Assembly (NCBI RefSeq): GCF_021869535.1
Contig: NW_026262637.1
Span: 2,604,001-2,668,000 of the forward strand
Reading direction: 5' to 3'
Length of the DNA stretch: 64,000 nucleotides
Origin: Mytilus californianus
Lineage: Eukaryota
The number at the start of each line of letters is the position of its first letter. Position 1 is the first letter of the stretch. The translations under genes and the position numbers were made by a program. Of the stretch, positions 10,490-52,624 are shown piece after piece. The notes beneath the pieces were generated by a model, which did not search any database, was not told where the DNA came from, and saw nothing but the letters and a program-made list of their open reading frames with translations.

Positions 10490-10561
10490 AAATATTTCAA
10501 TGCCACATTGTTCCTGAAAACATCATCAGGTACGATGGTTAATTTGTTGTTCGCTAAATCC
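10490..10561 (-). CDS. LRR gene exon 9 (72 nt, A-type): DLANNKLTIVPDDVFRNNVALKY
   Basis: ttcattttAG acceptor, GTAAGT donor, phase 2/2, fits the xLxxNxLxxLPxxxFxxxxxLxxL consensus. Confidence 0.88.
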
Positions 10562-11282
10562 CTAAAATGAATAAAACAAATCCGTTTATTTTCTTCAATT
10601 AAATGACTGAGGTTTCGAAAATTTACTGAAACACAGCAGTACTTTTAAAAGCGTAATTTTATATATATAAATACATGAAACGTACCAAAAATTAAGGAAG
10701 AACTACTAATATTTAAACCAACGCAAATCTATTTATTTTACAGCCAATAACGCATTTTTTCTGATAGCAACTTATGAAATATTACATATTAAATATGATA
10801 GTTGTTGATACTTAAAGATACATTTATAAGGATACATACAGATATAGAAGTCTTTACAAAGGACCAACCAGCAAACTTAATATGAACCGGATCGAATAGT
10901 GTAGACAACACTGTACATATATATAAAATGTATATATATATATATAATGAACTAATTTTTGAATGATTATCATCCAAAGGAAACAGAAAATTAAAAAATA
11001 TATATATATTATGTCTATGTTTTGAATGTCGATACTTTTTGCTATGATGTACCATTTGTATTAAAGCTCTAAACTACTTTGTGCTCTTTCATTTATTACA
11101 GATTTCACTTGCAGTATACATGAAACTGTGATTACCATCTGACTGTTATAATTAATTTGTCTTCATAGAACTTTTATGTTCCGTACAAAACAAACAGCAA
11201 TTATTTGGATAAAGGTTTCCATAGCCTAAGAAATTTGTTATTAGGTATATACTATCATGTTAGCAAACAATAATTAACTTAC

Positions 11283-11351
11283 AAAATTAAAAGCACATTG
11301 TTCCTGAAAACAGCACCAGGCACGCTTGTTAATTTGTTGTTCGATAAATTC
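11283..11351 (-). CDS. LRR gene exon 8 (69 nt, B-type): NLSNNKLTSVPGAVFRNNVLLI
   Basis: ttatttaatgcAG acceptor, GTAAGT donor, in frame but one codon shorter than its siblings. Confidence 0.8.
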
Positions 11352-11941
11352 CTGCATTAAATAAAATAAACCTAGATTTGTTTTCTAAATAAATAAATAA
11401 ATTTCATAAATTGTGATTTAGTTGTCGGAGTCACAATCCTGTCTTATAGTCTCGATTGTCACATATTTTAATATTAGTAAGACTTATCCTTGTCTCCTAC
11501 AATGGTCAACACGATCGGTCTAACATATAGACCACGCACTGCTAACATTACCAAAGCAACTGAGATTACCCTCTCCAGTGTGGGTTAAATGTTGGTCAAT
11601 TATATTTAGTGTATGTATCTTTTTTAATACAGTTGTCTGTCATATATACTATAGATGAATCGAAGTCAGTATTTTTACTTTCATGTTCAAAATTTATTTT
11701 TAATGATTGGTTTTGAATTAAAAGTAATGAAAATATGCACAGTCAATCATCCAATTCAATGTACACGGATTATGTTAGAGGTGATAAATGTTCGATTATT
11801 ATATTTAATTTGTCTCCATTGAGCTTATATATTAGGTATAACATATTGCTGAGGTTAAGATATCAGGATGACACATGTTTGTAGGGAAATAATAGTATGT
11901 CAGTAAATATACTAACATGATTACAGTTATTATTTACTTAC

Positions 11942-12013
11942 AAATCTTCCAAGGCCACATTGTTCCTGAAAACACCATCAGGTACGATGGTTAGTTTGTT
12001 GTTCGATAAACTC
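11942..12013 (-). CDS. LRR gene exon 7 (72 nt, B/A hybrid): SLSNNKLTIVPDGVFRNNVALED
   Basis: tttatttaatgtAG acceptor, GTAAGT donor, phase 2/2. Confidence 0.88.
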
Positions 12014-12339
12014 CTACATTAAATAAAACAAACCCAGATTTGTTTTCTAAATAAATAAATTAGAATTTGAAAACTTACAAAAAATAGAGGAAGTACTGAT
12101 AGGAGAGTAATTCCTATTCATCAAAAGAAGTAAAATTGAAGTATTCTTTTCGAAAATGTTAAGTATGTCATCATGATATTTTTTAACATATTTATGTCAC
12201 AAATAAATATACATATGTGATCAAATTGTCGGACATATGTGATCAAATTGTCGGAGTCACAGTCCTGTCCTATAGTCTCGATTTTTTCACATATTCTAAC
12301 ATAAGTAAAACGTATTGTTGTCTGTTACCATGGGAAAGC

Positions 12340-12774
12340 CATTAAACAAAGAGTTCCAAATGGTGAAGTCGAAATCATCCCTTCGTAAATTTTACGGACG
12401 CCATCACGAGTTTGTTGACCGTTAAAAATATCCGTTTCACAGATGATATCGGATATGTTCCTTATGTCGTCACTACAATTCCATTCCCTTTTCATGAATG
12501 TGACCTACCGAATTGGAATATATACCGGGTTTTTAATAACACATGCAACACGACGGGTGCCACATGTGGGGCAGTGTCTGCTTATCCTTCCGGATCACCT
12601 GATATCACCCCCGTTTTTGGCGGGGGTCCTGTAGCTTAGTCTTTAGTTTTCTATGTTGTGACTTGTGGATTATTATTTGTCTGTTTGATTTTTTTCCTTT
12701 TTGTAGCCTTGGCGTATTCAGTTTATTTTCTATCTATGAATTTTTATGTCCCTCAGGTATCTTTTGCCCTTCTT
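12340..12774 (+). mobile_element. 3' end of Penelope-like retroelement (RT C-terminus KFYGRHHE plus 3' tail)
   Basis: gagttccaaatggtgaag...cgtaaattttacggacgccatcacgag and a tail matching 37920-38390, 33345-33600(-) and 16195-16305. Confidence 0.75.
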
Positions 12775-12795
12775 TAGATTGTTGTTCGATAACTC
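12775..12795 (-). pseudogene. Broken LRR exon remnant (A-type acceptor plus first ~21 nt)
   Basis: ttattcaattgaAG|GAGTTATCGAACAACAATCTA carries a 1-nt deletion versus siblings. The rest is replaced by the Penelope-like insertion. Confidence 0.7.
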
Positions 12796-13405
12796 CTTCA
12801 ATTGAATAAAACAAATCAGTTTATTTTCCTAAATTGAATGACTTAGACATGCTAGATTTCATAAACTTACTGAAAATAGAGGACTTAATCATAACAGATC
12901 TGCTAGTTGTTAATAGTTATAGATAACTATATATGGAAAACAATAGATATAGATGTCTTTGAAAAGAAACCAAACAGCAAAATTATTAAGTACCGGATCG
13001 TCTAGTAAAGACGATATTATACATATATAATATATATATATATATTCTGAAGACATTTTTGATCGATTATTATTAAAGAAAACAATGAATTAGATATATA
13101 TATAATTTGTTAATACTCATTATTATGATCTACCAATTGTATTAAAGTTCAAAATTACTGTGTGTACTTTTTATGATACAGATTTCGATTGCAGTATACG
13201 TTGAACTGTGACTACCGACCAATTGATATATTTAGCTTATTTTCATATAACTTTTATGTTCGGTACAAAACAAACAGCGATAACAGGGTTGAAGTTTCCA
13301 ATGCCAAAGTTAAATCAAAATATTAGGATAGAAAATGTTTGAATAGGTATATACAATCATGTTAGCAAACATACTCACAATATTATAGTTTTTTTTTTAA
13401 CTTAC

Positions 13406-13477
13406 ACAGCAGATAAAAGCAGATTGTTCCTGAAAACACCATCAGTCACGCTTGTTATTTTGTTGTTCGATAAACCC
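13406..13477 (-). CDS. LRR gene exon 6 (72 nt, B-type): GLSNNKITSVTDGVFRNNLLLSA
   Basis: ttttttctaatgtAG acceptor, GTAAGT donor, phase 2/2. Confidence 0.87.
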
Positions 13478-16010
13478 CTACATTAGAAAAAACCATCAAG
13501 ATTTGTATTCAATTTAAATAAATTAGACTTCAAAAACTTAAAGAACATAGGGGAAGTACTTAAAATAGAGTCATTTATATCTATCTATTTACATGTTATA
13601 TGTCGAAATTTTCAAACAAAAGTAAATAAAACAACGAACAAAATTATGCAATCAATTATCAATTTTAAAGCAACTATTGCATTAATACTGACATTGATTT
13701 ATTACCAGATTCATTTGAAGTAAAACAATGTATTTTAAAGTTGTGCAACGATGTTTTTTGTTATATAATATGATTAGAATACACAAAACACAATAATGAT
13801 AGACAACCTTCTCATTTGTTTGTTGTCTCAAAACAGATGGTTAATGTCCACTTATGATGTACCTGTTATTTGATTAAGTGGTATAGACTTTAGTTTTATG
13901 TCTTTTTTATTCTTTTTATGTATAACTTTGAATTTGTTTGATGCTAAAATCATGACATTTTTCTAAGGTTGTTTGTTCACTTTTCGATAAGATTCAGACA
14001 TTAAGGATGTTTGGTAGCTGTGTTCATTCACTTATATCACATTCTTCTTAAATCCTAATTATCCTTTACAATGAACGTTCATATTTAACTTAAATAAGTT
14101 GAAAGTTATCTGACAACAGTGAGTTATAGGAATACAAAAAAGAAGGTTACGTTATCCTTTAACTTCCAGTTTTGCTATACAGATAATGTCCTCTCATTTA
14201 TAATTTACAAATAATTTATAAATAGCGTGTAAAACTATCTATCTTAACGAACTTTAAATAAAGGATTCATTTGAAATTTATTTTGACTAATATTTATTGA
14301 TAATGGTTGTTGTATTAATATCATATGATTTTAAATGAGAGTTACTGCTTTTGAGAAACAATGAGTTAAAAGAAGTAAAGTTAAAGAATTCTTTTTGAAA
14401 ATTGTCATCATTAGTTTATTAATTTTATGAAACATCTATGTTACAGATGACTACCGAAAAGCTTCAGTTGTCGGGCCACAATCTTCTCATATAGTCTTGA
14501 TAGTCACTTAGTCATTGATTCTCACCATGGTCAACACGATCGGTTTATAATATGGACCACGCACTGCCCTGACTGCGGAGCGATGTGATGTCCAGTGTAA
14601 GTTTAATGTCGGTCAGTTATATCAATTGTATGTATTATTTTATAGACTATTGTCCATCATATGGTTACATTTTTTTTATTTCTGTAGTGATGTTTGATGG
14701 TTTCTGGGCGTTCCTATTGTATCTTTTGCCTTCGTGTAATAACAAACTAGGCTGCTTGTCATTTGATAGTTTTGATAAACAATACTTACAGTATCAGCAA
14801 TTTGACATTATAGAAAAACAAATCAAGTGGCAAGGTCGTTAAAGAATTCCCATCTAAGTATCTTTAAAAAAATGTAATTGTTATAAGTATTGGGGGGAAA
14901 TATATAATATAAATACCAGAATCAAAAAATAAAAGTAGACTTTTTTATAAACCCGAAAAGATTGAGTACATTGTAATTACGATAATAATAGTCAAAAGAC
15001 CAAAATAAATACAATCGATAGTCGCTCTTCAGCGCTTGTTTTGTTATTGTATCTAAATTTCACATTGTAGACACTACATCTTCATTATAACGGATTTAAA
15101 AGGATTCAGAAACACAGGTAATCCTTTTTCGGCAATTTTCAGCATTTATTTAAAAATCAAATTAACAAAACGACGAAAATATTGTTTGGAATCACTTATG
15201 GTTTGATTTTGAACTTAAATGTAGGCTTTTAAATATGCACATGTGTTTAAAACATGTAGCGATATAAAACAAAATATGAAAACACATGCTGGAATTCCCG
15301 TGTCGATTATCATATATCCTGTTGCCATAATTTAAATTCTAGTTTCAATATTTGAAGAATTATTTTGTCTCTACAAAATATAGCCGGCTATTTTATCTCT
15401 TTTTTTATATAACAGAAAAAAAATTGCTCAGTTTTCAATTGACATTGCGTAAACTGTTTTAAGTCATTGTGTATTGGCAATCCCCATTTCAATTCATCTC
15501 AATTCGTCTCAAAGGAGCAAATTCTGACTCTTGTTTTAGTTCCTTTAAAATTGTATGATGTAGATCAGTTTTTACTGTATTGGTGTCTTAAATCACAGAT
15601 GACTGTCTATATGCGTCAGTTACCGGGGCCAAAAACCTAACAAAAAGTCTCGTTTACCACATAGTCGAATACCAAGGGACTTTCAATGTCACTTATATTG
15701 GGAAGCACGTCGTGTAATAACAAACTGGTCAGAATTTTTCCATTCATTTTCAAACTTTCTTTGTATCGATTGGTTTGATTAAAAATAAATGAAAAATATG
15801 CAAAGTTAATCATGCAATTCAATGTAAACGGTCAGTGTAAGAGGTGATTTATTTCGAGCATTACATTTAATTTGTATTCATAGAGCTCATATGTTCGATA
15901 TATCATAATTTTGAAGGTGAATCAAAATATTAGGATTGCAACTTCTTTGTAAGAGAAATACTATCATGTCAGTTAACATACTAACATAATTACAACTATT
16001 GTTTACATAC

Positions 16011-16082
16011 ATATATTTCAATGCCACATTGTTCCGGAAAACATCATCTGGTACGATGGCTAGATTGTTCTTCTGTAGAACC
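16011..16082 (-). CDS. LRR gene exon 5 (72 nt, A-type): VLQKNNLAIVPDDVFRNNVALKY
   Basis: ttttattcaatgtAG acceptor, GTATGT donor, phase 2/2. Confidence 0.87.
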
Positions 16083-16633
16083 CTACATTGAATAAAACAA
16101 ATCAGTTATTTTCTTCAATTCCATAACTTTTATTTCGAAAACTAACAGAAAATAGAGGAAGTACTTACAGTTATAATGAACTTAATCTTTAGTTGTGTGT
16201 ACTATTATTTGTCCCTTTGTTGTTTTCATTTTTAGCCATGGCGTTGTCAGTTAATTTTCGATTTATGAGTTTGATTGTTTCTCTTGTATCTTTCGCCCCT
16301 CTTTTATAGAAGAGTAATAATTGCATATACAAGTATATATAATGTGTCGATAGTTAAGAAAGAACTACTTTAAAAAAAAACAAAAAAAACCAGCAAATTT
16401 ACTATGTACGAGATCATCTAGTAACGCCGATACTACACATATATACATATATATTATGAGAAATTGTTTGGACGTATAACATACAAAATAAACAGAGAAT
16501 TAGAAGAGATATGATTGAAATGTTTAGATTTTGATACTCATTGTTTTTTTTCTTTGTGATTACCGTCCAATTGATATATTCAGTTTGTCTTTATTGAGTT
16601 AACATATATATGTTCGGTACAAACAAACAGCAA

Positions 16634-16910
16634 TTAGGGAGCTACCATTTGATTTTTATGGGGGGGGGGGGGGGGGGGGGGGGGCTAGGATGAAATTTGA
16701 AAAAAATAGGCAGGACAGGAGTATTGAGTAAAAAAAAGGCAGGATGAGACACTTGCAAAAAAAAAAGTCAGGATGACAATTAAGGTAAAAAAAAGTCAGG
16801 ATAAACTTTAAAAAAAAAGGCAGGACCGAATAGAGTGAAAAATAAAAAGGCAGGACAGAGATTACAATTAAAAAAAATGCAGGACAAAATTTTTCATCCT
16901 TAGAATAATT
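16634..16910. mobile_element. Truncated MITE-like repeat (GGGAGCTACCATTTGA head, poly-G run, AAAAAGGCAGGA repeats)
   Basis: G homopolymer at ~16660-16685 and about six aaaaggcagga/aaaagtcagga units. The second terminus was not seen. Confidence 0.45.
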
Positions 16911-17489
16911 AAAATTTAAAATTATTTTGAATTTTAGTCTAGAAATCTTCATACCCAAAACTAATTTTTATCATTCCTTATATCATCTAAACTTTTAATT
17001 TCTGGTGTCTCAGAACTCCCAACCTCGCTACCATGGTAAAATATGACATTCAGAAATGGCGTGTGAACCTTCAACTTCAATAGCCAGGCACAACTCAAGG
17101 AAAGATACAAATGAATGAAAAAAATGGCATTTTGATGACAAAGATGTTATTTTCCCTGTAGAATCTGTTCTTTTTTAAATATGCCCTTTTCTAATAAAAA
17201 ACATAACAGAAGTGACATACAATCTAACCATACCTACACCACAAGTCAACTTTCTTGTCAATTTTAAAAATTTCGTATTCTTTTAAAAAACACGAAACAA
17301 CAATCTTCCAAGAAAAGAAATAACCACGGTGCAAACGAATGCCATGATGTTTTCTGTTGTGGTTCGTTTTGATGATGTGTAGTGTCTTATCTTTTAAAGT
17401 CCAAATAATTGTGAAATAGCCTTCAATACCGTCATTGTAATGATAACTCATCGGACTGGTAATTAGAAAATAATTGTATGAAATATCAG

Positions 17490-17720
17490 AACGACATATT
17501 CGTTACATTTGTTTCCTGTACCAAGTCAGGAATATAGCAGTTTGTATACAGTTCGTTTCTATGAATGTTAATGTTTAGTATTTTTTTTTTGCTTTGATGT
17601 GTTCCTGTTGTTCTTTGTTTAGTTGATGTGTTTTCCTCGGTTTTAGTTTGTAACCCAGATTTGTTTTCTTTCAATCGATTTTTTACTTTTGAAAAGCGAT
17701 TAACTACTGTTGCCTTTTGT
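17490..17720. repeat. Interspersed repeat family M2 (my label; CAAGTCAGGAATATGGCAGTT ... CTACTGTTGCCTTT)
   Basis: Also at ~26280-26490, with partial copies at ~19520-19600 and ~38000-38030 (inverted). Confidence 0.75.
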
Positions 17721-17829
17721 TTGCAATCCTAAAGTTAAATAAAAAATATTAGGATAAGTAATTATCCATTAGGAAAACTCTTTCATGTCAGCAAACACAT
17801 TCACAAAAGTACAGTTCGTTTTTACTTAC

Positions 17830-17901
17830 AAAGAAGTTAAAACCACATTTTCCCTGAATACACCATTAGGTACGCTTGTTAGTTTGTTGTTCGATATATC
17901 C
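17830..17901 (-). CDS. LRR gene exon 4 (72 nt, B-type): DISNNKLTSVPNGVFRENVVLTS
   Basis: ctttattacttgtAG acceptor, GTAAGT donor, phase 2/2. Confidence 0.88.
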
Positions 17902-18028
17902 CTACAAGTAATAAAGTTATACAGGTGGTTTTCTTTCAAATAGATAAATTAGACTCCGAAAACTTACAGAAAGTACTTATACATGTTATAGGAAAGTAAT
18001 TCTTTTGCATGTACAGTAGAACTTTGAA

Positions 18029-19160: not shown

Positions 19161-20420
19161 CCTACATATACAAGTACATATACTGTGTCGATATGAAATG
19201 AAGAACGACTTAAATTAACGAACAAAATTATGCAGTATGCAAAACATTTTACAGCATATAGTGCATTAAATCTGAAAGCAATTTATTACCAGACGCGCAT
19301 TGGGTTGTCGTTTCTTTTTTTGGGAAATTTTCGATGTCATTCTGCGGTAAACCATGTACTATTACACATTAAAAATATGTATTTCTCTGTTCTGAGTGTT
19401 CATGCGTTTTTTTTAACTGTAAAAATTGTACGTAGTTTTAACCTTTTAGCAGTATTTTTAACATTACCATACAAGTGAGAGGTTTACCTAATCATAATAG
19501 TAGGTTCAACGTACCAATATTTATTTAAATGTCTTGTATCAAGTCAGGAATTAGTAGTTGCTGTCAAATAGTTCGTTTCAATATTTGTCGGTGTTTTGAT
19601 TTGTTGCTGTTCAATGGTTCTGTATTTGCGTTGTTATAAATAATACTTACAGGTCTTGCAAATCAACGTTAGAGGAGAACAGATTAATTGGTAAGGTTGT
19701 CAAAGAGTTCCTAGAGATGGATCTTTTAAAAATGTTAATATTACTAATATCGGGAAAAATATATATGATATTAATACAAAAATCTAAACATGAAAGTACA
19801 GGCTCTTATGAAACCGAACAGAGAGAGTAGTTATGCATAGTTATAGTCAAAAGAAAAAAACACAACCGGTTGTCAAGCGTTACTACTAGTTTTAATATCT
19901 TATTTTTGTTGGACACCATATACACTGCATCTCCATTACAATGGATTAAAAAGGATTCAGTAACAGCGCCAAGTAATCTTTGTTACACAACTTTGAACAA
20001 TCGTTTTAACATCAAAGTTACCATTGTTAAACATGCTATAGCTTTATAGAAATAAACTAAAAAAGAAAGCTGGAATTCCCATGTCGATTTCTATAATTTG
20101 AACGTGTTGTATATTTCGAAAGAAAAACCGAGAGATATTTGAAATCGTGTTGTCTGATCGTTGGTCGAGTTATTGTCTCTTTGACATATTCCCAATTTCC
20201 ATTCGCAATTTTACCTGTATGTGTTTTTGTCATAACTCAAATATGGTTTTCGAGTTTCAAATTCTATCAGATATCAATATTTGTAGAATTCTTTTGCCTT
20301 TACAAAACGTTATAGCCAGCTGTTTTCGTCTCTTTTTTTTTAATATATCAGAAAATATTCGCTGAGTTTTCAATTTACATTGCGTGAAATGTTTCATAAT
20401 GTGCATGTCATTGTGAATTG

Positions 20421-20965
20421 ACAATTCCCTTATCAATTCAACACAATTCCCTGATCAATTCAACACAATTCCCTTATAAATTCAACACAATTCCCTTATC
20501 AATTCAACACAATTCCCTTATCAGTTCAACACATTCCCTTATCAATTCAACACAATTCCCTGATCAATTCAACACAATTCCCTGATCAATTCAACACAAT
20601 TCCCTTATCAATTCAACACAATTCCCTTATCAATTCAACACAATTCCCTGATCAATTCAACACAATTCCCTGATCAATTCAACACAATTCCCTGATCAAT
20701 TCAACACAATTCCCTGATCAATTCAACACAATTCCCTTATCAATTCAACACAATTCAACACAATTCCCTTATCAATTCAACACAATTCCCTTATCAATTC
20801 AACACAATTCCCTTATCAATTCAACACAATTCCCTTATCAATTCAACACAATTCCCTTATCAATTCAACACAATTCCCTCATCAATTCAACACAATTCCC
20901 TTATCAATTCAACACAATTCCCTTATCAATTCAACACAATTCCCTTATCAATTCAACACAATTCC
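20421..20965. repeat. 22-bp minisatellite (CAATTCCCTTATCAATTCAACA)n, about 24-25 copies
   Basis: Head-to-tail units with CTTAT/CTGAT variants and no spacers. Confidence 0.97.
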
Positions 20966-21412: not shown

Positions 21413-21484
21413 AATTTTTCTAATGCCACGTTGTTCCTGAAGACGTCTTCCGGTACGATGGTTAGACTGTTGTTCAACAAATCA
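21413..21484 (-). CDS. LRR gene exon 3 (72 nt, A-type): DLLNNSLTIVPEDVFRNNVALEK
   Basis: gatttattcaatgtAG acceptor, GTAAGT donor, phase 2/2. Confidence 0.88.
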
Positions 21485-24400
21485 CTACATTGAATAAATC
21501 AAATATTTTCTTTTTAATTAAATGACTCAGATTTCGAAAACTTACTTACATAAAGGGAGTACCTATATGAGAATAACTCTTATATATACAAATACATATC
21601 ATGTGTCGATATGACACATAACTTACCATTTATAGGTCACAACGGCCTTTAATTATGAACAAAGAACATATCTGATAGGCAGATATAAAAGGCCCTGCAC
21701 CTACTGATGCCAAGCAATTTAAACGAGAAAACTAATTGCCAAAGTTATTTGAAAATTATTAACGAAAAACCAAATTTGTATCAAAGCAACAAACGACAAC
21801 CACTAGCAATTAACATTTTTTGAACTCAGGAAAACACTTGCAAGATACTTTTTGAAATCAAATTACTGTGTGTAATGCAAAGTCAAAGGGAAACATATAA
21901 TATGCACTACTGGGCGGCGGTGTTCCATTCGGCATTTAAGCTGGTTGTGCCGACCATCTCCTTTTGAAAGCCGATCACCTTTCCATTTTTTTCGGTGGTC
22001 GGCTTTTTTTTCAAATTCCGGCTTTTTTTTAGGTTCTGCACTGTAACAAATTAAATACTAATGGCTGATTTGTTTTCATTGACAAAAATTGCCGATCGTC
22101 AAATTTCAATGTTTTCTTTAATAATTGGGGAAAGAGAAAGGCAGATGACGAATGTCATAAGGTAAATTCTTGGCCGAATAAGTCAACAAAAACGAATAGT
22201 TGTATTGGAATTGTTGAAATTGAAAAAAAACACATCAAAACAACGGAAAAGGCACGCAAGCGCAGATAAATAAGAACAGGACTTTAAATTACTGTTCTGT
22301 GTGCCAAAAATACACCACTAAAGCGAAGAAGATATCTATTAAGTTAACCAAATTGCTTCTGATTTTGTAGCGTGTTTATTTGTTAGGCTGTTACACAACC
22401 TTCCCAAGGTATGGATAAAAGGTGTGTGTGTTCCAAAATTAGTAACCTGTAGTACAGTAGTTGTCGTATTATCCTGCCTGTCATATTTTTTTTTGTTAAT
22501 GTTTTGTTATGAATATAGCTATTAGTTTTCTCGTTTAAATTGTTCACACATGTTAGGCTTATGACTTGTTAATTCAGCCACCTTCAAAGTATGGGTTTAC
22601 CTCATTATTGAAGGCCGTACAGTGACTTAAATTGCTTTATACCACTTCAGTTTATCTTCATTTGATATATGTCTCATTGACAATCAGACCAGATCTCCTC
22701 GTTTTTATATCAGATATATTTATTTTTGTTATCAGAAAAGCTGTTTAGCATGTTTAAACCAATTTTCTTATGAGTAAGGAATTGCATTTTATGACATTGA
22801 TTTCAAACTTGTTTTCATTTGTGTTTTTTTTTTTTATTTAACTTCTAAACTGCGTTTAAAGAGAAAGCTAGGTCAATCTACACAAGATAAAATTTAAAAA
22901 GCTTTAATTCAATGTGAGTTTTTATAAGTGCATGTAGTAAAATATTATGCGTAATTTAAAACATAACATTTTTGTTGATTTTATGCCAAAAGCATTTTGT
23001 CTATATAATGCTCCCTTACGTTTTCATAACTCTACTTTCATTGAAATATTTGACTTCAATGTAGATACTTAATAAAAATCAAATTGAATTCATTTATTAA
23101 AAAAATAAAATTCACAAGCATTTTCTGATCAATCTAAAATTGCATATCATGTTTTTTGTTTGCTTTTTTTTTTTTTTACATTTTTCTAATAAAAAGAACT
23201 AGATTTTAACTGTGTCAACACTTAAAAATGCAATAATGTCAGAACACAGGTACATTAGAAAAAGCACATTAAAATACTTTTGCATAAACCATGATAGCTC
23301 AATAAAGAATTGACAGAAAAATAAGAAAGATTATTTTCTGTTCTCATCACAACATATTTAACCCCTAAATGTGCTTGCTTTCACAGACTACATTAAGTTT
23401 CAGAGGTGAATCCTGAAAGGGGTGTGTTTGCCCGGGATCTTTAACACTCCCTTTTAACCCCTGGATCTGTCAATGATCGGACATTGGAGGTTTGCGGGTA
23501 ATAAAAAAATTTCTGCCCAGTTCTAAACATTTTTTTTTCATTACAAATTTTATTAATTACACTATTAATTGTTACTTTATGATATGGTACAAAAATCTAC
23601 CCAACAAAATCGATTTGTTTTGGTCGCAGATGACTTTCAAAATGTTGATATGATTGAAAAATCTAAAAATTATCTTCCTTGGTCCAAAAATGCCATGTTT
23701 TTGCATTAAAATTGAGATATCTTTTTTAAATCACCGGTGACCTATATTTTTTTATTATTTGTTTTCAAATAAGCTGTACTGAAACTAAACAACTGTAAAA
23801 TTTAGGCGATTTCTGTAATTTAGTTCTTTTTTTATTTCGATATTACCTCTATTTCTCTATTCAACAGAAAAAAAGTCATCAACAAAAATGCATGTTTCGT
23901 TCAAAGGCAGACTGTGAGCTTAAATCGACGGTGACCCCATTTTTTAAAAATTTTTCTATTAAGTATATGATAAATTTCATTAATAGGAAAAAAAGCGAAA
24001 TTCTATATTTGAAAAAAATGGATTTATACCCTCGAGCCCGCTTAACTTGTTTTGAATGTAGTGACTCTTCTGTCTATTCGAAACATACTGCATGTACAAT
24101 ATGTGTTGATGATGTAAAAGCATTTATATTTTGCTAATTGGGGGAGTGTCATCGTCCAGTAGGAATAGCAATTATATTGTCTAGTTAGTCACGGATATGA
24201 AGAAATCTGTCATATATTAAAATTGGAAGCAATACATTCAGCAATATTTGAACACTGCCGCATATAAGCACATATCATCACATCAAAACACAGATGCGTA
24301 GCATCATCATCCTAACATATAAAGAATTATGTGACTCATAACCTATTATCATCTATATAGAAGTTAGAAGATGTGGTATGAGTGACAATGAGACAACTTT

Positions 24401-27189: not shown

Positions 27190-27560
27190 TTCAAACCATG
27201 AAAACTTAATATTGTCCAGTGAACCATGAAAATTAGAACACGGTCAGATGAAACCTGTCAATCAAACATATACACCTCATGATCAGTCCATATGTCATAA
27301 AAAGTGATTGTATAGCTTGTAGCATCTGAGAAGCATTGGGAAATAGACCAAATCACACACACATTGTTCAATGAACCATGATATTGAGGTAAATTTCTGA
27401 TGAAACCTGCCAGTTAGACTTCCATATATACACTTTAGAATCATTCCATACACCAAATATAGTTTATCAACTGCTTATAGTATCTCAGAAATAGACTTTA
27501 TAAATGTAACTAGAATAATCTGAATCATTGATCCATGAAATAAAGTCAAGGTCTTGTGAA
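27190..27560 (+). repeat. Degenerate ~150-bp satellite-like units (CCATGAAAATGAGGTCAAGGTC family)
   Basis: Same family as the minus-oriented array at 57460-58185. Confidence 0.6.
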
Positions 27561-27599
27561 CCCCCTGGTGGAACAACTGCAATGCCAGCATTAACTTCA

Positions 27600-27880
27600 G
27601 ATGAGATGCACTATAAATTTCACTGAAACTAGAAATTCTATTTATCTAAACTGCTATTTTTTGTGAATGATGATCCAAGATATTCATGAATTTAGATATG
27701 GTGCACAATTATTATTCACTGAAACTATGCATTTTGTATTATTCCAAACTGCTATTTTAAATGAATAATCATCCAAGGTATCAATGAAATTAAGATATCA
27801 TGCACTATTCATATTCACTGAAACTATGAATTCTCATTATTCCAATTTGCATTTTTTTAAATGAATAATTATTCAAGGTT
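27600..27880. repeat. ~97-bp tandem repeat, three copies
   Basis: ttcactgaaacta recurs at ~27620, 27716 and 27815 with conserved downstream sequence. Confidence 0.8.
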
Positions 27881-28054
27881 TTCACAGTCATCCAGTAATC
27901 TGGTCTTCCTTACAAATTGTCGTTTGCTATTTTTTCAATGCACAATTTCCTTCTTGTCTAATTTAATGCGAACAATACATCATCAGCATGGCATATAAAC
28001 ATAATGCTGTAAGCGCTATTCGTAATTTCCAAACACAATAAATAACAAACACAC

Positions 28055-29380
28055 AACTAGAATTGCCATTGCCAGCAATAGCGGATGTCACCCTGGTCCG
28101 CCAATTGCCACTAAGTGGTAGCCATCTCGTTTTTTTTAACATTGAATAACATATTTACTTCACAATACAAAATTCTGCGAGTTTTCAGGAAGTCTAAAGC
28201 ATTTTGGATATTTTAACATTTGTACTGTTTCCATGGCAACAGCGGCTATTTTGAAAATTCCAAAGATGGATTGCAGATCCTCAAATACCAAAGAACATTT
28301 CCACAAAGTTTCATTCAATTAGAGACTTTCCGATTTTTCACATTCTATCTGTTTCCATGACAAGGGCAGCCATCTTGAAAATGCCAACACTCGACTGCAC
28401 TTCTGCACATGGTCATTAATATTTTGGTATAGTTCCATAACAATTGGTCCATCCAATTCAGAGAAATAGTCTGGACAAAAAGGTATAGAATAATAATAAA
28501 AACTAGATTTGCCATTGCAAGCAATAGCGGATGTCACCCTTCCCCCTATTGCCTCTAAGCGGCAGCCATTTCGAAAATTTTAAACAGTGAATGCACATAT
28601 ATGCATGGCTTTACATATTTCTGTAAATTTTCAGAACATTTGGAGTATTTTGAAATTTTTACACATTTTTGCTGTTTCCATGTCAACGGCGGCCATTTTG
28701 GAAATTCCAAAGCCAGATATCTCATTTATACTTGCCAGTTAACATTTATATTAAGTTTCATAAAGTTTGGAGCATTTTGAAATTTTTGACATTTTTGCTG
28801 GTTTCCATGGTAACAGAGACCATTTACAAAATTTTAATTACAGATGCCACATTGGAGGGAACATACAATCAAAGTTTCAATCGATTTGACCTACCATTTT
28901 AAGAAAGTAAATGCCACTTTTAGGTTTTTGGATCATTTTGACCTGTTTTGCATTGTTTCCATGGTAACGGCAGACATTTTTGAAATTCCAACGCCAAATT
29001 CCACATCTTCCAATGTTGCTCATCATTACTGTGAAGTTTCATTAAATTTTGAGCATTTTGATATTTTTGAAATATTTGGCGTAGTTTCCATGGCAATATA
29101 GTAGTTCCAGTGATTGCCAAAATCATCCAAAACCAGTATATAGTGGGCACCTACATTGTATTAAAATATCATTATTCTAAGTTTATGCATATCCAAATAA
29201 TCCACCAAACTCTAAAATTTTATTTTTTCACCTTTCTTTGGTTTCCATGGTGATGGCATCCATTTTTTAGTGCCAAAGTTGCACTGCAACTCGTAAGTCA
29301 GGGTTCCTTGTTATAGTGAACAACCATTAAGATTGGTGCATTAGGCTCTGAGAAAACTGCAGGACAAAATTAGATGGAAA

Positions 29381-29415
<35 letters not shown>

Positions 29416-29543
29416 GAAACGGAGGAAAAGCAATATGTCACCCGACCTCCGTCAGGGCGACATAATTAATAATAATAATCATAAAAAAAAAAGAAACGGA
29501 GGAAAAGTAATATGTCACCCGACCTCCGTCAGGGCGACATAAT
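28055..29543 (+). mobile_element. Helentron-associated (HINE-like) non-autonomous elements in tandem
   Basis: Two heads AACTAGA.TTGCCATTGC.AGCAATAGCGGATGTCACCC (28055, 28501), internal CCATGG..ACGGCGGCCATTTTG repeats and (AAT)n. The 3' hairpin ATGTCACCC..GGGCGACAT is duplicated at ~29435 and ~29511. Confidence 0.65.
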
Positions 29544-30361
29544 TAAAAATTAATTCACTTTTTTACAATTTGCAGATGTTAAAAGTGACCAAATGACATC
29601 TATATTCCCTATGCATCAATGTGCATATGTAGTCAACTTTATATTCTGGCTGGGAATCATGCTCAAACCGATGATAATTATACCAAAAAATTACAGGTCA
29701 AATGAATATGTTCAAACTGTGAGAAAATTACATATATATTTACACTAAAGTAAAACATACATGTTAGCATGCCAGCTATATAAAACCCTGAAAAGGGGGG
29801 AGTGACAAAATGTTTTATCAAAATTGCCATAAGACTGTAGTGATATGAATGAAAGGGGGAAAATAACAACGATGCATGTACTACAATGATTAAGTGATTG
29901 AAAAAATAATGTAGGAAATCACTTATTAGTAATGAGGTAGGGAGTATACATCATTCTTACTAGGATATTACAGATGTGTTTCAGTGGAAATTTTTATCAA
30001 CAGTTTGGCAGGTGACATTCTTCGTCAATGATATCAAACTACAAATTTAATGTGTTTCATTCAAAACTTGAATATAATGTTTCTTTACTTTAAGCAGTAA
30101 ATGCTTCTTATATTAGACATTGTTTCTAATTATTTGTCAACAGACCAGTTCTCATATGGACAACTTCTGTCCTAAGGCATAATCTGGACTTATACATATA
30201 TATATATATATACAAAAAATTTCACTTCAGCATGTTATACAATTAAAATACAGATATGACTGGGTAAACTGATATACAGTGACAGCACTTCTAACAAAGA
30301 TCTGTCATATCATTATGTGTTTTCTTTATAATTATAGTTGACAGTATAGTTTATTACTTAC

Positions 30362-30433
30362 ATGAAATTCACATTTAAGTAATCCGCAAAAGTACCATTG
30401 TGTAAGGTTCTAATGGCGTTGTCAGACAAATCT
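30362..30433 (-). CDS. LRR gene exon 2 (72 nt, unique): DLSDNAIRTLHNGTFADYLNVNF
   Basis: gtttttttttaatatAG acceptor, GTAAGT donor. Junction codons TT+A=Leu with exon 1 and AT+T=Ile with exon 3. Confidence 0.87.
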
Positions 30434-30867
30434 CTATATTAAAAAAAAACACACAAAATTACAGTTCTATTTTACAAATTCAATCTTTTATTCTGAAAAT
30501 ATTGATATATTTCGAATGAATAAGTTACTAACAATTGCTAATACTGTATGTTGTAGTCACATCTTCCTGTGCTATTATTTAGCTGGAAATGTAAAACGGT
30601 AGAGATACAATACCCTGGTCAGATACTCTGATTAATATCAATCATCAACTGTGTCGATGTATTGCGAGAAATGACAGAATGTAGAAATTTCTTGGGGTCA
30701 TTAAGCATGGAACAGTGGTCAATTACATTAGGGTCCCTAAATTAGTTTGTGTGACCATTCTTCAAAAGGACGAAGTAGAACAAAAAGTCACAATGAAAAA
30801 GGTAACAATTCAGATTAGAAAACAAATATTCTCTGATTTACAAATGACTTATGTTTAATCTATTTGG

Positions 30868-32987
30868 GGGTCCCTGTAAAGTGAGGAAAGAAACAGAAAC
30901 AAAACCGAGCGAAACGAAACGAAACGAAATACAGCTAAACAAAACGAAACACGGCGAAAATAAACGAAACATGTAAATTGAGAAACGAAACACAACGAAA
31001 CGAAACAAAATATCTGTATTTTGAGGAACGACCCATAAAAAATCTTCCTGACGAGATAGTGTATTATGATGTGTATATGTGCATGGCCGAAAATCATTGA
31101 GGGCGGTTAAGTGGGAGTCTTTTATCGAAAAATCTTATTGTTTGCTTAAAAATTGTATACAAATATACTCGGTGGTAAGTTTATCTTTTTGGATAATAAC
31201 GCATCCCCATTTCCTTTCACCCATAATCTGTCTCTGTTGGTTTTCTTTTTACAAAAGATCTGACTTAATGTGTGCATAACTACACGATTAACGGTTTATT
31301 TGAAGACACATTACATACTGGGCTTAATTTCATGGATTATTGCACTAAAAAGAACGCATTACATACCAGTTCTGTTTTCTGTGCTTTGTATTTGTCGATG
31401 CTTTATAGTCCCATATGTTGTTATCGTTAATAATAATATGATATTATAGAATGTATTTCTTAAGAAATAATTCATGGCAGCAGAAGATTTGTTCTCATTT
31501 AACCATGGCTTGGGCATTTATATTCGATTTTTTTTTATGGGGGGAGCGACAGCGAGGGGTAAAATACGAATATAAATGTTCAACCCATGGTTAAATGAAA
31601 ACAAATCTACGACTGCATGAAATATTTCGATTATAACAGCTAAGGACACATTCGGTAATTTTGTTAACCGTGAAAGCCCTATACACACCTTAGTGTTTTG
31701 GCTGTTCTGTTTTACCCCGATATGATAATATTAGTAATATAATATAATTCAATAATAATGTTTTTTTTTAAATCGCATTGTTCACCTAAAAATATTCATC
31801 TATTGTAATTTCATTGCATTCTGAAGCGCACAAGAAGCTTTAAAACGCCCGGTGTTTACATTTGATTTTTTGTTTACGGAAGCATTCATATGACGTCACC
31901 TTGTTTTGATGCCATGCAAACACGATTTCGCTGAATTTTCATTTTAGGAAATTTTACAACGAAAAATCAATTGAAATGGACTGATTTGTTTATTATGTTT
32001 TAAAATAGAGATATCTATTTGAATCTGATTCTTGGCCTACGTAAACTGTGGATTTTGAAGTCGAAAATTGTGAATATTTGGTAGTATAAATATGTTTTGC
32101 GTAACGCAGAACAGCCAGTTTTGTGTATCTATGCCCTTGCGATAAAAGTAGATATACTGTGGTTATATTTGTTGACGAAAATACATAAAGGTCGTCATAC
32201 TAAAATGTTCATCCTATCACGTCTGTTTATATCATTGTATATGCAACAATCTGCAATAGGTCGTTTTTATTTATTGTTAATGAGTTTGTGCCAATTAAGG
32301 TTATTACATGCATTCACGAATGAACTACGAAGTACATTAAGGCATCTCCATAAATGTAAAGTCGATGGTACATGTTGCAAGTAGGTATATATGAATTGAA
32401 CTTGAAACTAAAAGAAAAAGAAACGAAACAAAACAAGAATATCCATATCATCTGGCCTCTGTATGACTCGCTTAACTATAACATTGTCATGTTCATTGAA
32501 TCGCAAATTATAGTTTAAATATCTGATTTGGCATATAAATGAAAAAGACTATGTTATAACGAACATGATTATAGTTTAGAGTTGACGTGAACACAACTCC
32601 ATTCTAATTCAATCTACCTTAACAAACAACATAAACCTACATGTAGTATTAGACGGACTGACTAATGGTCGGCAGCACAGACCAGAAAACATTATGTCCT
32701 ACTATTGTAGGCGGGACATACAAATCCTATTCACAAAGAAATAATGGCCAACTCACGATATATTCAGACGATTTCAATTCTGCTCATGTCATGTCCCCCT
32801 TTCCCCCTAAAATAACGCTTAAAATTTACTGTTTCACTTCAACCTTTTTAATTTACATGTCTGGTTTCGTTCCGTTTCGTTTCGCTGTGTTTCATTTCGT
32901 GTCGGTGTGTTTCGTTTTGATTCGCTGTGTTTCGTTTAGTTTCGCTGTGTTTGGTTTCTGTTCCGCTTCCCACTTTATAGGGACCCT
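30868..32987. mobile_element. Inverted pair of GGGTCCCT(A/G)TAAAGTG ends with (GAAAC)n subterminal tracts; possible ~2.1-kb TIR element
   Basis: gggtccctgtaaagtgaggaaagaaacagaaac at 30868 and the inverse gtttctgttccgcttcccactttatagggaccc ending at 32986. No TSD seen. Confidence 0.55.
31463..31629. repeat. Fold-back palindrome with ~55-bp arms around a GCGACAGCGAG centre
   Basis: tcatgg...catttaaccatggcttgggcatttatattcg is inverted as cgaatataaatgttcaacccatggttaaatg...catga. Confidence 0.8.
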
Positions 32988-33344
32988 TTCATTCATCAGG
33001 CTTATTTGATATAATATACTGTCCTTTGTGTGTAGCTATTGTAAATCTATGCTTTCGGATAATAACAATTTTAGGCTTACAAATCTTCATTTTAAAATGT
33101 ATTAAACCTTAAACTTTTTTGTATAAGATGTAAAAGAGGGGCGAAAGATATACTTTTTTCAAAACGGACTAAAGTCGTTAATATAAATCAAAATTAAGAA
33201 ACTGAATGGTTATATTAATACACATGCTATATTAATCTTCATAAACTCAAATGTTGCAAACCACTTGTCCTCCCTCCTAGAAAAATCTGTTGTTGTCCCC
33301 TTAGAAAGAGACCCAACCAGCATCGTTTGTGTGTGTAGATCACA

Positions 33345-33960
33345 TTACATAAAAGAGGGGCGAAAAATACCAAAGGGACAGTCAAACTCATAGATCGAAA
33401 ATAAACTGACAACGCCATGGCTAAAAATGAAAAAGACAAACAGACAAATAATAGTACACATGACACAACATAGAAAACAACAGAATTAGCAACACGAATC
33501 CCACCAAAAAAAATCTTGGGGTGATCTCAGATGCTTCGGAAGGGTAAGCAGATCCTGCTCTACATGTGGCACCCATCGTGTTGCTGCGTGATAAATGAAT
33601 TAGGTATGGACAACTCACTTTGAAACTCAAAATATACCCCTACGACCCTAACGCAACAGGAAATCCTGAATAATAATAGGCCTGTTCTATTCCTTTGCAA
33701 TTTCGACCAGAGATGAAGAATTTGATCTTTCATCACTGTATTCGATACCTAAACTACGCAAATGTCCTTACAAACAATGAAAAATTGCTTTGTCTCCTTA
33801 GTGCTCTACGAAACCTCTTTCTGAAATTTTAACATCAATGTTATCAGTAATCAAAGCTTGGCATCAAATTTATTGTAACACTACCTATTCTAGAGGTGGT
33901 GTAATCAAATGTGTATTCTAATAAAATCATAAAATTTTAAAGAGTATATACAATCTAAGT
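33345..33960. mobile_element. Penelope-like retroelement fragments: 3' tail (-, 33345-33600) next to decayed RT N-terminal part (+, ~33680-33960)
   Basis: Plus strand reads as a decayed ...SLYSIPKLRKCPYKQ...CSTKPLS..LTS...YSRGG... segment. The minus part matches the tail of 12340-12774. Confidence 0.65.
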
Positions 33961-34124
33961 TCGATAAGATATATTCTTTCAACACAGTCATCAAATTTTT
34001 GAATTATTCACTTCATCTTTATAGCGGATAGTAAAAGTTAAAAGATACCGCATAAGGAGTATATATATCAGATATCATTCGATATTCTAGGGCTCATAAG
34101 GAAGCTATAAGACCGAGCGGTGCA

Positions 34125-34443
34125 GTTCATATCCGGAATGTCAACAACTACAAGTACGTAGGTATAGCTCGGCTATAAGTATCGAATATCATATGACCTC
34201 CATTGACGTTTATTTTTGACGATTTTAGTTAAATGCATTTGTTTCCGGTTAATATATAATCTCCAAAACAATGTGGTATGATTGCGAATGAGACAATTCT
34301 TCAAAAAAGACCAACATGACGCAGAAATGAACAACTATAGGTCACCGCAATCATACCAAATCTTCTTTTTTAAGATATTCAATACTATTCGTAGCCGAGC
34401 TATACTACGTACTTGAGAAATTGTTGACATTCCTAATATGAAC
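34125..34443. mobile_element. MITE-like element with ~55-bp imperfect TIRs around an M1 head
   Basis: gttcatatccggaatgtcaacaactacaagtacgtaggtatagctcggcta versus tagccgagctatactacgtacttgagaaattgttgacattcctaatatgaac. Confidence 0.7.
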
Positions 34444-34882
34444 ATACCACAAGGTTGTTAGCAAAGTGATTAAGCATTAAACCCTCATTTTTGTCTTTAC
34501 CAGTTTACATTAATTGTATACTTTTAGGCATTGGCGTTGTAAAATCATTTCATGATAAGAATATTTTATCTAGTTTTTTTTCCTATTATCATTGAACCAT
34601 TCAGGTCGGCCTTTTGTCGTTTCCTGTATGTAAAGTGTGCAATTTTCCATAAATTTAGTCAGGAATACATTTTACTTATTTTGTTCGAAGTACTTAGACT
34701 TTTACTGAAGTTCAATGTTTGCGATTTGAATGTTCTTTATCAGCAGTCCGTTCTATTAGTCTCAACAAGTCATTTTAAAAGTTTAGTAATTGCAGTTAAA
34801 TGAGGATATTGTACTATGAAATCTTGTATACAATATATGATATATAACATGTGTTTTTTTTTTACATATACTAACTACATAC

Positions 34883-35070
34883 AACTCTAATGTTGACTCA
34901 GGGAAGCTTGGTATTTCTATTATCCCTCTTCTGTCGCAGACATACCGAGGTCCTTTGGTCTCACACACCATTTCACAAATTGATATTATCTTACAATCTT
35001 CGTTGGCATTGCAACTCACTTCAATCAATAATAATAGTGTTATTTCCTTGCATCTAAGCAAAACGGACAT
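34883..35070 (-). CDS. LRR gene first coding exon: signal peptide plus Cys-rich LRR N-cap (MSVLLRCKEITLLLLIEVSCNANEDCKIISICEMVCETKGPRYVCDRRGIIEIPSFPESTLE)
   Basis: ATG at 35070 with an in-frame TAA upstream. Acceptor ccctttgcAG at 35091-35090 implies a further 5' UTR exon. The C..C..C...CxxxxIxxIP cap is present. 188 nt ending in phase 2 at GTATGT. Confidence 0.88.
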
Positions 35071-35502
35071 TTCTATTCTTTATTTTTTCCTGCAAAGGGT
35101 ATTGATGACAAAGTTATAGAGAACATTTTTGAATAGTGTTTTCATTTTTATGTGCACAGCAAACATATATTTATTTATTGGTTTCTGTGTTTATTAATTT
35201 ATTAACTTGTTGTATACAAAAGACGTCATGTAATATTGCTATTTGTTTTTAGCTTTTTTTTTATTTTGCAAAATATAGTACCAACGAAATACGAAACACA
35301 AACTTGTTAAGACAAAAGAGTTGGTGTAAATATGAATCTTCTTTGCTTATCAAATATGCAAACGACTTTATACTAGATATTGAAAGAATGTTTCTCAATT
35401 TTTTTATTTTAGTTCGTGTACTAATAAACACACATTTAGTGTTGACTGCAAAGTTCCATAAAAAACACTAAGAGTCCTAAATGTCTGCCAATAAATCTGA
35501 TT

Positions 35503-52615: not shown

Positions 52616-52624
52616 TTGGTAGAT

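What the first reader, a model, noticed from the sequence alone, without database searches (positions are those of the whole stretch)
10490..35089. Hidden LRR receptor-like gene built from tandem single-repeat 72-nt exons
Splicing exon 1 to the eight LRR exons gives an open 253-codon frame: SP + N-cap + L-DLSDNAIRTLHNGTFADYLNVNF-I-DLLNNSLTIVPEDVFRNNVALEK-L-DISNNKLTSVPNGVFRENVVLTS-L-VLQKNNLAIVPDDVFRNNVALKY-M-GLSNNKITSVTDGVFRNNLLLSA-V-SLSNNKLTIVPDGVFRNNVALED-L-NLSNNKLTSVPGAVFRNNVLLI-L-DLANNKLTIVPDDVFRNNVALKY. Seen: every exon is AG/GT-bounded and phase 2/2, and every split codon encodes a hydrophobic residue at the LRR L position. Established: one-LRR-per-72-nt-exon structure occurs in several animal LRR families, so that feature alone is not new. 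Inference: the recent expansion of exon+intron units suggests a lineage-specific, copy-number-variable recognition protein, possibly immune.
Basis: partly seen in the sequence, partly recalled or inferred. Interest (0 to 1): 0.85.

Follow-up and report, generated by a model that had tools for sequence, protein, structure and literature searches.

The report
Mussel LRR gene, single-repeat exons
The stretch holds the front part of a real mussel gene for a cell-surface-type leucine-rich-repeat protein in which every 24-residue repeat is its own 72-base exon; the layout is well known, the gene's tail end is not in the window, and the one RNA data set I could test showed no expression.

Summary
On the minus strand, exon 1 (35070-34883: start codon, signal-like segment, four-cysteine cap) is followed by ten, not eight, intact LRR exons. 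Nine are 72 nt and one is 69 nt. Two dead exon copies also exist.

It is a new member of a gene family whose named members are all from Mytilus. Exon 1 is 62-70% identical to nine proteins, and full-length paralogues carry signal peptide, N-cap, 4-9 LRRs, a C-terminal cysteine cap, a stalk and usually a TM segment and tail. No 3' exon of that kind lies in the 10.4 kb downstream, so the gene is incomplete here or truncated.

The exons kept their frame, length and splice sites while the flanks diverged 12-30% and collected indels, which indicates purifying selection. The repeat units differ by 15-35%, against about 4% between two mussel species that share the same arrangement. The expansion is therefore old, not recent.

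One RNA run showed no reads on six exons. Immune function and copy-number variation remain untested.

The scan noted similar one-repeat-per-exon LRR genes on other pieces of this genome (s1-340015, s1-342861).

The parts
34883..35070 (-). Exon 1: ATG, signal-peptide-like hydrophobic segment, four-cysteine N-terminal cap, then ...IPSFPESTLE; donor GTATGT, phase 2
   Evidence: It is 62-70% identical to the N-termini of nine proteins, E 1e-15 to 2e-20. The hydrophobic peak lies at residues 10-18. There is no Pfam LRRNT hit.
30362..30433 (-). LRR exon L1 (first-LRR type, DLSDNAIRTL...), 72 nt, AG/GTAAGT
   Evidence: It is 61% identical to the first LRR of paralogue P0006 and groups with that exon in the unit tree, support 95.
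21413..21484 (-). LRR exon L2 (type A, ...TIVPEDVFRNNVALEK), 72 nt
19651..19722 (-).
   Evidence: Type C forms a clade with support 100 that includes exons of two paralogous loci. A type C repeat is coding in P0003 and P0023.
17830..17901 (-). LRR exon L4 (type B, ...TSVPNGVFRENVVLTS), 72 nt
16011..16082 (-). LRR exon L5 (type A), 72 nt, donor GTATGT
14790..14861 (-).
13406..13477 (-). LRR exon L7 (type B), 72 nt
12774..12819 (-). Dead exon fragment: acceptor flank plus the first ~22 nt of a type A exon, cut off by a high-copy repeat
   Evidence: nhmmer partial hit E 6e-4; blastn 12774-12883 against the A units; tblastn
11942..12013 (-). LRR exon L8, 72 nt; its 5' flank and 5' half resemble type B, its 3' half and 3' flank type A (recombinant)
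   Evidence: alignment; blastn pairs 11247-11398/11907-12060 and 10371-10626/11822-12078, both 83%
11283..11351 (-). LRR exon L9 (type B), 69 nt (in-frame loss of one codon)
10490..10561 (-). LRR exon L10 (type A, ends ...VALKY + TT), intact donor GTAAGT; last coding exon found in the window
   Evidence: In the M. coruscus model P0011 an exon of this type is spliced straight to the C-terminal cap exon.
7746..10165 (-). Non-LTR retrotransposon remnant (reverse transcriptase ORFs) inserted downstream of L10
   Evidence: ORFs; Pfam RVT_1 68.8 bits on 8460-8870
3900..5625 (-). Decayed further repeat unit: introns colinear with those around the type C exons; the exon itself has a 51-nt deletion and a spoiled donor (GTAATT) at about 4040
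   Evidence: blastn pairs 5408-5625/20227-20449, 4065-4343/19737-20019, 3953-4035/14710-14793; alignment

Best explanation
The stretch is the 5' part of an ordinarily spliced mussel gene. The genus Mytilus is inferred from the relatives. The gene belongs to a family whose named members are all from Mytilus and which encodes small LRR receptor-like proteins. Exon 1 gives a signal peptide and a four-cysteine N-cap. Ten following exons each give one 24-residue 'typical' LRR, and together they would form a curved solenoid. The most variable residues of that solenoid lie at the exon junctions, on the predicted concave beta-sheet, which is the usual ligand-binding face. By analogy with full-length paralogues, the missing 3' exons should add a cysteine C-cap, a stalk and, in most members, a membrane anchor and a short repeat-bearing tail. 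Those exons lie outside the window, below coordinate 1, or have been lost. The array grew by tandem duplication of exon-plus-intron units, including a three-exon A-C-B super-unit, and by unequal crossing-over. It loses copies to transposon hits and deletions. All exons are phase 2-2, so any gain, loss or skipping keeps the reading frame. Shown here: the exon anatomy, LRR identity, family membership, selection on exon integrity, and the old age and interspecies conservation of the array. Inferred: secretion or membrane anchoring, ligand binding, and the nature of the 3' end. Unknown: the ligand and the tissue of expression.
For: Anatomy and open frame. LRR identity: Pfam LRR_8 at 58 bits. Family: exon 1 finds nine relatives at 62-70% identity, and the named ones are M. 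edulis, M. galloprovincialis and M. trossulus proteins. The model is 50-54% identical over about 250 residues to P0023, an M. trossulus protein with 9 LRRs, a C-cap and a stalk. P0006 shows the full architecture with TM and tail. Paralogous loci L001 and L002 have the same layout of one LRR per 72-nt exon followed by C-cap, TM or stalk exons. Constraint: 0-1 indel events per exon against 2-5 per 100-nt flank, and P of 0.004 or less that seven exons all stay intact under neutral substitution. The donor hexamer is GTAAGT in 9 of 10 LRR exons and GTATGT in the tenth, while the flanks are 60-85% identical. Pooled pN/pS is 0.57. Variability peaks at repeat positions 23, 24 and 2, which flank the junction, but also at positions 13 and 21. 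Duplication and recombination: colinear blocks 21.6-17.7 kb and 16.2-13.3 kb, the chimeric exon L8, and the dead copies. Conservation: contigs of another individual and of a species about 4% diverged are colinear over L10-L5 (table 8).
Against: No C-cap, TM or tail exon was found in the 10.4 kb downstream, by motif, protein or DNA search. A LINE sits right after L10 and the next unit is dead, so the gene may be truncated. There was no RNA depth on any of six exons in the one RNA run tested, of which about 6% (10.3 million reads) was read and whose tissue is unknown. Pfam does not recognise the N-cap as LRRNT. The signal peptide was judged only by hydrophobicity. A pN/pS of 0.57 among repeats is only mild constraint.
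Confidence: 0.7

Rival explanations
1. It is a truncated, decaying gene remnant. The 5' exon and LRR array survive, but the 3' end was separated or lost (LINE insertion, dead downstream unit), and the locus is no longer expressed as a protein.
For: No 3' exons in the window. LINE at 7746-10165 directly downstream. A dead type C exon at about 4.0 kb, with no type B exon detected where colinearity with the other units would place one. Zero RNA depth. No annotated orthologue in public protein sets.
Against: All 11 exons are intact with consensus splice sites despite 12-30% divergence of the flanks, and the exons are almost free of indels, so any loss of function would have to be recent. Introns of up to 8.9 kb occur inside this gene (L1 to L2), so a last intron longer than 10.4 kb is plausible. 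The exons are retained in a second species.
Confidence: 0.2
2. The array is a set of cassettes used combinatorially. Because every exon is phase 2-2, alternative inclusion of different exon subsets would yield many ectodomain variants from one gene, as proposed for brown-algal ROCO genes.
For: Any subset is in frame. In two paralogous loci, four intact 72-nt LRR exons each are left out of the annotated proteins. Alternative splicing of 72-bp phase-2 LRR exons is reported in brown algae (PMC11378527).
Against: There are no transcript data at all for this locus. Omission of exons by gene predictors is a common annotation error. The same pattern is expected from simple under-annotation.
Confidence: 0.08
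3. It is a lamprey-VLR-like germline cassette store, assembled somatically by gene conversion.
For: Only a superficial resemblance: many LRR modules lie next to a short N-terminal exon.
Against: Every module has a canonical AG acceptor, a polypyrimidine tract and a GTAAGT donor. All are colinear and in the same orientation as exon 1. Annotated paralogues are explained by ordinary splicing. DNA contigs from other individuals show the germline arrangement only.
Confidence: 0.01

Closest known systems
Mytilus paralogues: P0023 (M. trossulus, named 'carboxypeptidase N subunit 2-like'), P0006 and P0003 (M. edulis, uncharacterised / 'LRRNT domain-containing')
   Same: The exon-1 module is the same (62-70% identity, same cysteine spacing). 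The first-LRR type and the A/B/C repeat types are shared. The gene layout is the same, with one LRR per 72-nt phase-2 exon.
   Different: Overall identity is only 50-54%, so these are paralogues, not orthologues. The window gene has ten LRR exons against 4-9 in the annotated models. Its C-cap, stalk and TM exons are not in the window.
Vertebrate extracellular 'typical' LRR proteins: IGFALS, CPN2, LRRC15, and the LGR4/5 ectodomain
   Same: They have 24-residue LRRs of the LxxLxLxxNxL...F type, and they are the best PDB sequence matches of the family representative: IGFALS 7wrq E 3e-43, LRRC15 9oib E 9e-43, LGR4 about 1e-35. LGR and gonadotropin-receptor genes also have phase-2 single-LRR exons (stated in PMC11378527).
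   Different: No orthology is shown. The resemblance is generic to the repeat. There is no 7TM domain, and the family's own N-cap, C-cap and tail do not match Pfam models.
Brown-algal ROCO LRR exon arrays (PMC11378527; Zambounis 2012 as cited there) and Tetrahymena 90-bp LRR exon arrays (PMC6564038)
   Same: One LRR per exon of fixed length, all introns phase 2, tandem exon duplication with unequal crossing-over, and proposed diversification of binding surfaces.
   Different: These are unrelated proteins: cytoplasmic ROC-COR GTPases and ciliate proteins. The exon length is 90 bp in Tetrahymena. Here the protein is a secreted or membrane ectodomain with cysteine caps in an animal.
Lamprey variable lymphocyte receptors
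   Same: A small ectodomain of N-cap, LRRs and C-cap, with many LRR modules in the locus.
   Different: VLR cassettes lack splice sites and are copied in somatically. Here every module is a normal exon.

Membership tests
LRR superfamily, 'typical' 24-residue extracellular class (Pfam LRR_8 / clan LRR) | Tandem repeats matching LxxLxLxxNxL with a conserved Phe, scoring above the Pfam cut-off | tested here: met
   Three joined repeats (L8-L10) score LRR_8 58 bits against a cut-off of 27, and LRR_1 30.5 bits against 20.6. N6 and F16 are invariant in all ten repeats.
LRR superfamily, capped extracellular type | N-terminal cysteine cap (Pfam LRRNT PF01462) | tested here: inconclusive
   Exon 1 has four cysteines after the signal segment (C-x6-C-x3-C-x8-C, followed by ...G-I-I-E-I-P), conserved in the paralogues. 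Pfam gives no LRRNT hit at E of 1 or less. Paralogue P0003 reaches only E 0.22. The AlphaFold model of the paralogue has low confidence at the caps.
LRR superfamily, capped extracellular type | C-terminal cysteine cap (LRRCT) after the last repeat | tested here: not met
   It is not present anywhere in the window by motif, tblastn or blastn. It is present in the paralogues (CFDCDCLS...FTCRNG...NCS). It may lie outside the window.
Mytilus exon-1/LRR receptor-like family (P0003, P0006, P0023 and others) | Family-specific exon-1 module (signal peptide plus cap ending ...PSFPE.T) followed by the first-LRR type | tested here: met
   Exon 1 gives E 2e-20 to 6e-15 at 62-70% identity. L1 is 61% identical to the first LRR of P0006 and is its sister in the unit tree, support 95.
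Mytilus exon-1/LRR receptor-like family | One LRR per 72-nt phase-2 exon, with repeat types shared between loci | tested here: met
Mytilus exon-1/LRR receptor-like family | 3' module: C-cap, stalk, and a TM segment and tail with repeated ...YNNIPP... motif in most members | tested here: not met
   No match in the window. It cannot be decided without the sequence below coordinate 1.
Lamprey VLR-type assembled receptor | Cassettes without splice signals flanking an incomplete germline gene, with somatic assembly | tested here: not met
   All modules have AG...GTAAGT and are colinear. DNA contigs show only the germline order.
LGR / glycoprotein-hormone receptor | Seven-transmembrane domain after the LRR ectodomain | tested here: not met
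   There is no long ORF or 7TM-like exon in the window. Paralogues have a single TM or none.
Toll-like receptor | Cytoplasmic TIR domain | tested here: not met
   There is no TIR in the window or in the paralogue tails. Pfam finds only LRR families.
Carboxypeptidase N subunit 2 / IGFALS orthologue (the name given to P0023) | Orthology to vertebrate CPN2 or IGFALS | not tested
   Only generic repeat similarity was seen. The name is an automatic best-hit label.

The most novel reading that the evidence does not exclude
The intact phase-2 LRR exons of this family (ten here, plus four intact exons each left out of the annotated models at two paralogous loci) are used as alternative cassettes. On this reading one mussel gene would produce many different binding surfaces by exon choice, an animal counterpart of what is proposed for brown-algal ROCO genes.
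Probability: 0.08. Interest if true: 0.65.

Novelty: new member of a known kind. Interest (0 to 1): 0.27.

Why it matters
The finding adds a probably unannotated member to a mussel-restricted family of small LRR receptor-like proteins. It also gives a clean example of how such arrays evolve: exon-plus-intron duplication, an intra-exon crossover, transposon hits and dead copies, with selection keeping frame, length and splice sites. That is useful for annotating bivalve genomes, where gene predictors visibly skip intact 72-nt exons. It does not reveal a new mechanism, because the one-repeat-per-exon, phase-2 layout is long known. No evidence here ties the gene to immunity or to copy-number variation.

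Tried and rejected
1. I searched for the 3' end using an LRRCT motif scan, tblastn of twelve family proteins, and blastn of the C-cap, TM, tail and stalk exons of two paralogous loci. The only hit was an interspersed repeat at 1577-1825.
2. I looked for more exons below 10.4 kb. The profile search found none. The similarity at 1635-1829 to 21611-21804 is a dispersed repeat, not an exon unit.
3. I looked for an orthologue. The exon-1 search of 1.84 billion representatives and a profile search seeded with all window exons gave only paralogues. The M. coruscus locus L003 is 66-78% identical, so it is also paralogous.
4. RNA support: one RNA run showed no reads on the exons. Two runs guessed to be RNA were on offer, and the one I laid proved to be DNA because its introns are covered.
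5. Copy-number variation: joints seen in the sister species (11858->10408, 13391->11277) have short sides of 33-37 nt and lie between paralogous positions. They may come from other family loci, so they were not taken as evidence.
6. An AlphaFold model of paralogue P0023 with a 12-row alignment reached a mean pLDDT of only 57.8 and its caps were unreliable. No fold search was run on it.
7. Pfam LRRNT and LRRCT gave no significant hits. Rfam and tRNA scans of the window were empty.
8. The literature search found no description of this family.
9. The spliced protein has no reference, so I built it only inside scripts and did not send it to database or folding tools. Only one 70-residue piece was typed.


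Full report
**Setting.** The window is AT-rich (about 31% G+C) and full of transposon remnants. All named relatives of the gene described here are from Mytilus mussels, and earlier notes of the scan call this genome a mussel. The sequencing runs have coded organism names.

**Observation.**
- The true exon borders are:
  - E1 35070-34883
  - L1 30433-30362
  - L2 21484-21413
  - L4 17901-17830
  - L5 16082-16011
  - L7 13477-13406
  - L8 12013-11942
  - L9 11351-11283 (69 nt)
  - L10 10561-10490
- Every LRR exon is preceded by AG and followed by GTAAGT (GTATGT for L5). E1 has donor GTATGT.
- Each exon begins with one base and ends with two bases of a split codon. The split codons give L, I, M or V.
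- Two more exons of the same length and phase were missed: L3c 19722-19651 and L6c 14861-14790, both of a divergent '...N-S-L-T-T-L-P...' type. With them the frame is 301 codons and still open.
- A DNA profile of the exons finds exactly these ten full copies in the whole window (E 1e-14 to 1e-27). It also finds one fragment at 12819-12774, which is cut off by a very high-copy repeat.
- A third copy of the type C unit lies at 3.9-5.6 kb. Its introns are colinear with the other two, but the exon has lost 51 nt and its donor reads GTAATT.

**What the exons encode.**
- Three joined repeats pass Pfam LRR_8 (58 bits, cut-off 27).
- Across the ten repeats, N6 and F16 are invariant.
- The most variable positions are 23, 24 and 2, on either side of the exon junction, together with positions 13 and 21.
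- In the LxxLxLxxN register, positions 23, 24 and 2 are the exposed residues of the concave beta-strand. This is what any binding LRR shows and is not in itself proof of positive selection.
- E1 starts at the first ATG after an in-frame stop. It has a short hydrophobic core (residues 10-18) followed by ...VSC/NAN and four further cysteines.
- Pfam does not call E1 an LRRNT, so the cap rests on the cysteine pattern and on family conservation.

**Family.**
- Exon 1 alone, searched against 1.84 billion representatives, finds nine proteins at 62-70% identity (E 2e-20 to 6e-15) and nothing else credible.
- Five of the nine hits are merely exon 1 read on into the intron on short contigs. Four are spliced gene models from M. 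edulis and M. galloprovincialis.
- P0006 (M. edulis, 296 aa) shows a full architecture: signal peptide, cap, four LRRs, a cysteine C-cap (CFDCDCLS...FTCRNG...NCS), a TM segment, and a tail with a repeated ...YNNIPP... motif.
- Further members share this 3' module.
- A profile seeded with all window exons adds P0023 from M. trossulus, named 'carboxypeptidase N subunit 2-like'. It has nine LRRs, a C-cap and a stalk but no TM segment.
- The window model is 50-54% identical to P0023 over about 250 residues. These are therefore paralogues, and no orthologue is annotated in the sets searched.
- The genomic loci of P0006 and P0023 have the same layout of one LRR per 72-nt exon followed by C-cap and TM or stalk exons.
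- In each of those loci, four intact exons are not used by the annotated protein.
- The best solved-structure matches of P0023 are generic extracellular LRR proteins: IGFALS, LRRC15, LGR4 and Toll.

**Is the gene complete?**
- No. Nothing in the window matches the family's C-cap, stalk, TM or tail, at protein or DNA level.
- Downstream of L10 lie a LINE remnant at 7746-10165 (RVT_1) and then the dead type C unit.
- The unit order is A-C-B (L2, L3c, L4), A-C-B (L5, L6c, L7), an A fragment, then L8, L9, L10, the LINE, and the dead C copy.
- This order shows a three-exon super-unit duplicated at least three times, with the last copy decayed.
- The 3' exons are either beyond coordinate 1 or lost. 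An intron of 8.9 kb already exists inside the gene, between L1 and L2, so the first option is plausible.

**Is it maintained?**
- The seven A/B units differ from their consensus by 12-30% in the flanks and by 4-24% in the exons.
- The flanks carry 2-5 indel events per 100 nt. The exons carry none, apart from one in-frame codon loss.
- With substitutions alone at 10-25% divergence, the chance that seven exons all keep frame and AG/GT is 0.004 to 1e-6.
- Pooled pN/pS among the repeats is 0.57.
- This argues for selection on coding and splicing integrity since the duplications.

**Age and variability.**
- Units are 65-89% identical in exons and 50-86% in flanks.
- Contigs of a second species about 4% diverged, and of another individual of the source species, are colinear over the stretch that holds L10 to L5 (table 8).
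- In a tree of units from three loci, type C (support 100) and the first-LRR type (support 95) are shared between loci. The window's B copies, and more weakly its A copies, group together.
- The repeat types are therefore old. Part of the expansion is locus-specific, but it predates the species split several-fold, so it is not recent.
- L8 is a B/A recombinant, which shows that unequal exchange acts here.
- Joints seen in the sister species could be rearranged units or other family loci. I do not count them as evidence.

**Expression.** One RNA-seq run of the source species (10.3 million reads, about 6% of the run, tissue unknown) gave zero depth on L5-L10. The intronic repeat at 12.3-12.7 kb was covered in the same run. 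That is no support for expression, but it is not a refutation.

**Comparison with known systems.**
- One LRR per phase-2 exon is well documented. Gonadotropin-receptor genes and 72-bp exons in brown-algal ROCO genes, the latter with alternative splicing, are described in PMC11378527. Tetrahymena has 90-bp arrays shaped by unequal crossing-over (PMC6564038).
- The scan itself has already described two such LRR genes on other pieces of this genome.
- The present case is a new member of a known kind. It is not VLR-like, LGR-like or TLR-like; see the membership tests.

**Verdict.** It is wrong about recency, and it is unsupported on variability, immunity and expression.

Noticed in passing
window 12336-12775 (related copies 33352-33584 inverted, 16196-16307): A very high-copy interspersed repeat sits in the intron between L7 and L8. 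Contig depth there is 1e5-1e6 in the DNA runs, and it is the only part of the laid stretch with RNA reads (up to about 68x). It truncates an old type A exon copy at 12774.
   Followed up: partly
window 20421-20965: A 22-nt tandem repeat (about 25 copies, 92-98% matches, strongly C-rich on the + strand) lies inside the intron between L2 and L3c.
   Followed up: no
window 50388-50907 and 61614-62173: Two further satellite-like arrays: a 26/52-nt unit built from GGTCACATGAC-type words, and a 34/69/103-nt A-rich unit.
   Followed up: no
window 36394-37161, 51927-56513, 59117-59746: Several ORFs look like degraded non-LTR retrotransposon fragments. One is a weak RVT_1 hit at 59117-59746, 25.8 bits and below the cut-off. 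The region upstream of the gene appears to be mostly transposon debris.
   Followed up: partly
L001 13142-13213, 18756-18827, 19909-19980, 22786-22857; L002 15508-15579, 16774-16845, 17407-17478, 18328-18399: In two paralogous Mytilus loci, four intact 72-nt phase-2 LRR exons each are absent from the annotated proteins (P0006, P0023). This is either under-annotation or alternative exon use.
   Followed up: partly
L003 26041-26143, 28017-28273 and 32927-33432 (minus strand of the locus): Next to the M. coruscus gene for P0011 lies a second family gene in the opposite orientation. Its exon-1 and first-LRR units are 76% identical to those of the window, introns included, so the family is clustered.
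   Followed up: no
proteins P0006, P0011-P0015, P0018 (family tails): The cytoplasmic tails carry two to eight copies of a motif of about 30 residues, ...DGIDFIKT...GQM.KEYNNIPPKSHMN. It has a conserved tyrosine and no Pfam match. It could be a docking motif.
   Followed up: no
all A/B exon donors, e.g. window 10489-10484: The exons end in TT and the donor is GTAAGT, so an unspliced intron reads TTG TAA. Any transcript that ends in the intron after such an exon would stop exactly at the repeat border. Short secreted LRR-only products are therefore possible in principle.
   Followed up: no
proteins P0009 and P0016: The same exon-1 module is annotated in front of a fucolectin-type domain (P0009, Pfam PF22633) and in front of an unrelated acidic tail (P0016). 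This could be exon shuffling of the leader/cap exon or merged gene models.
   Followed up: no
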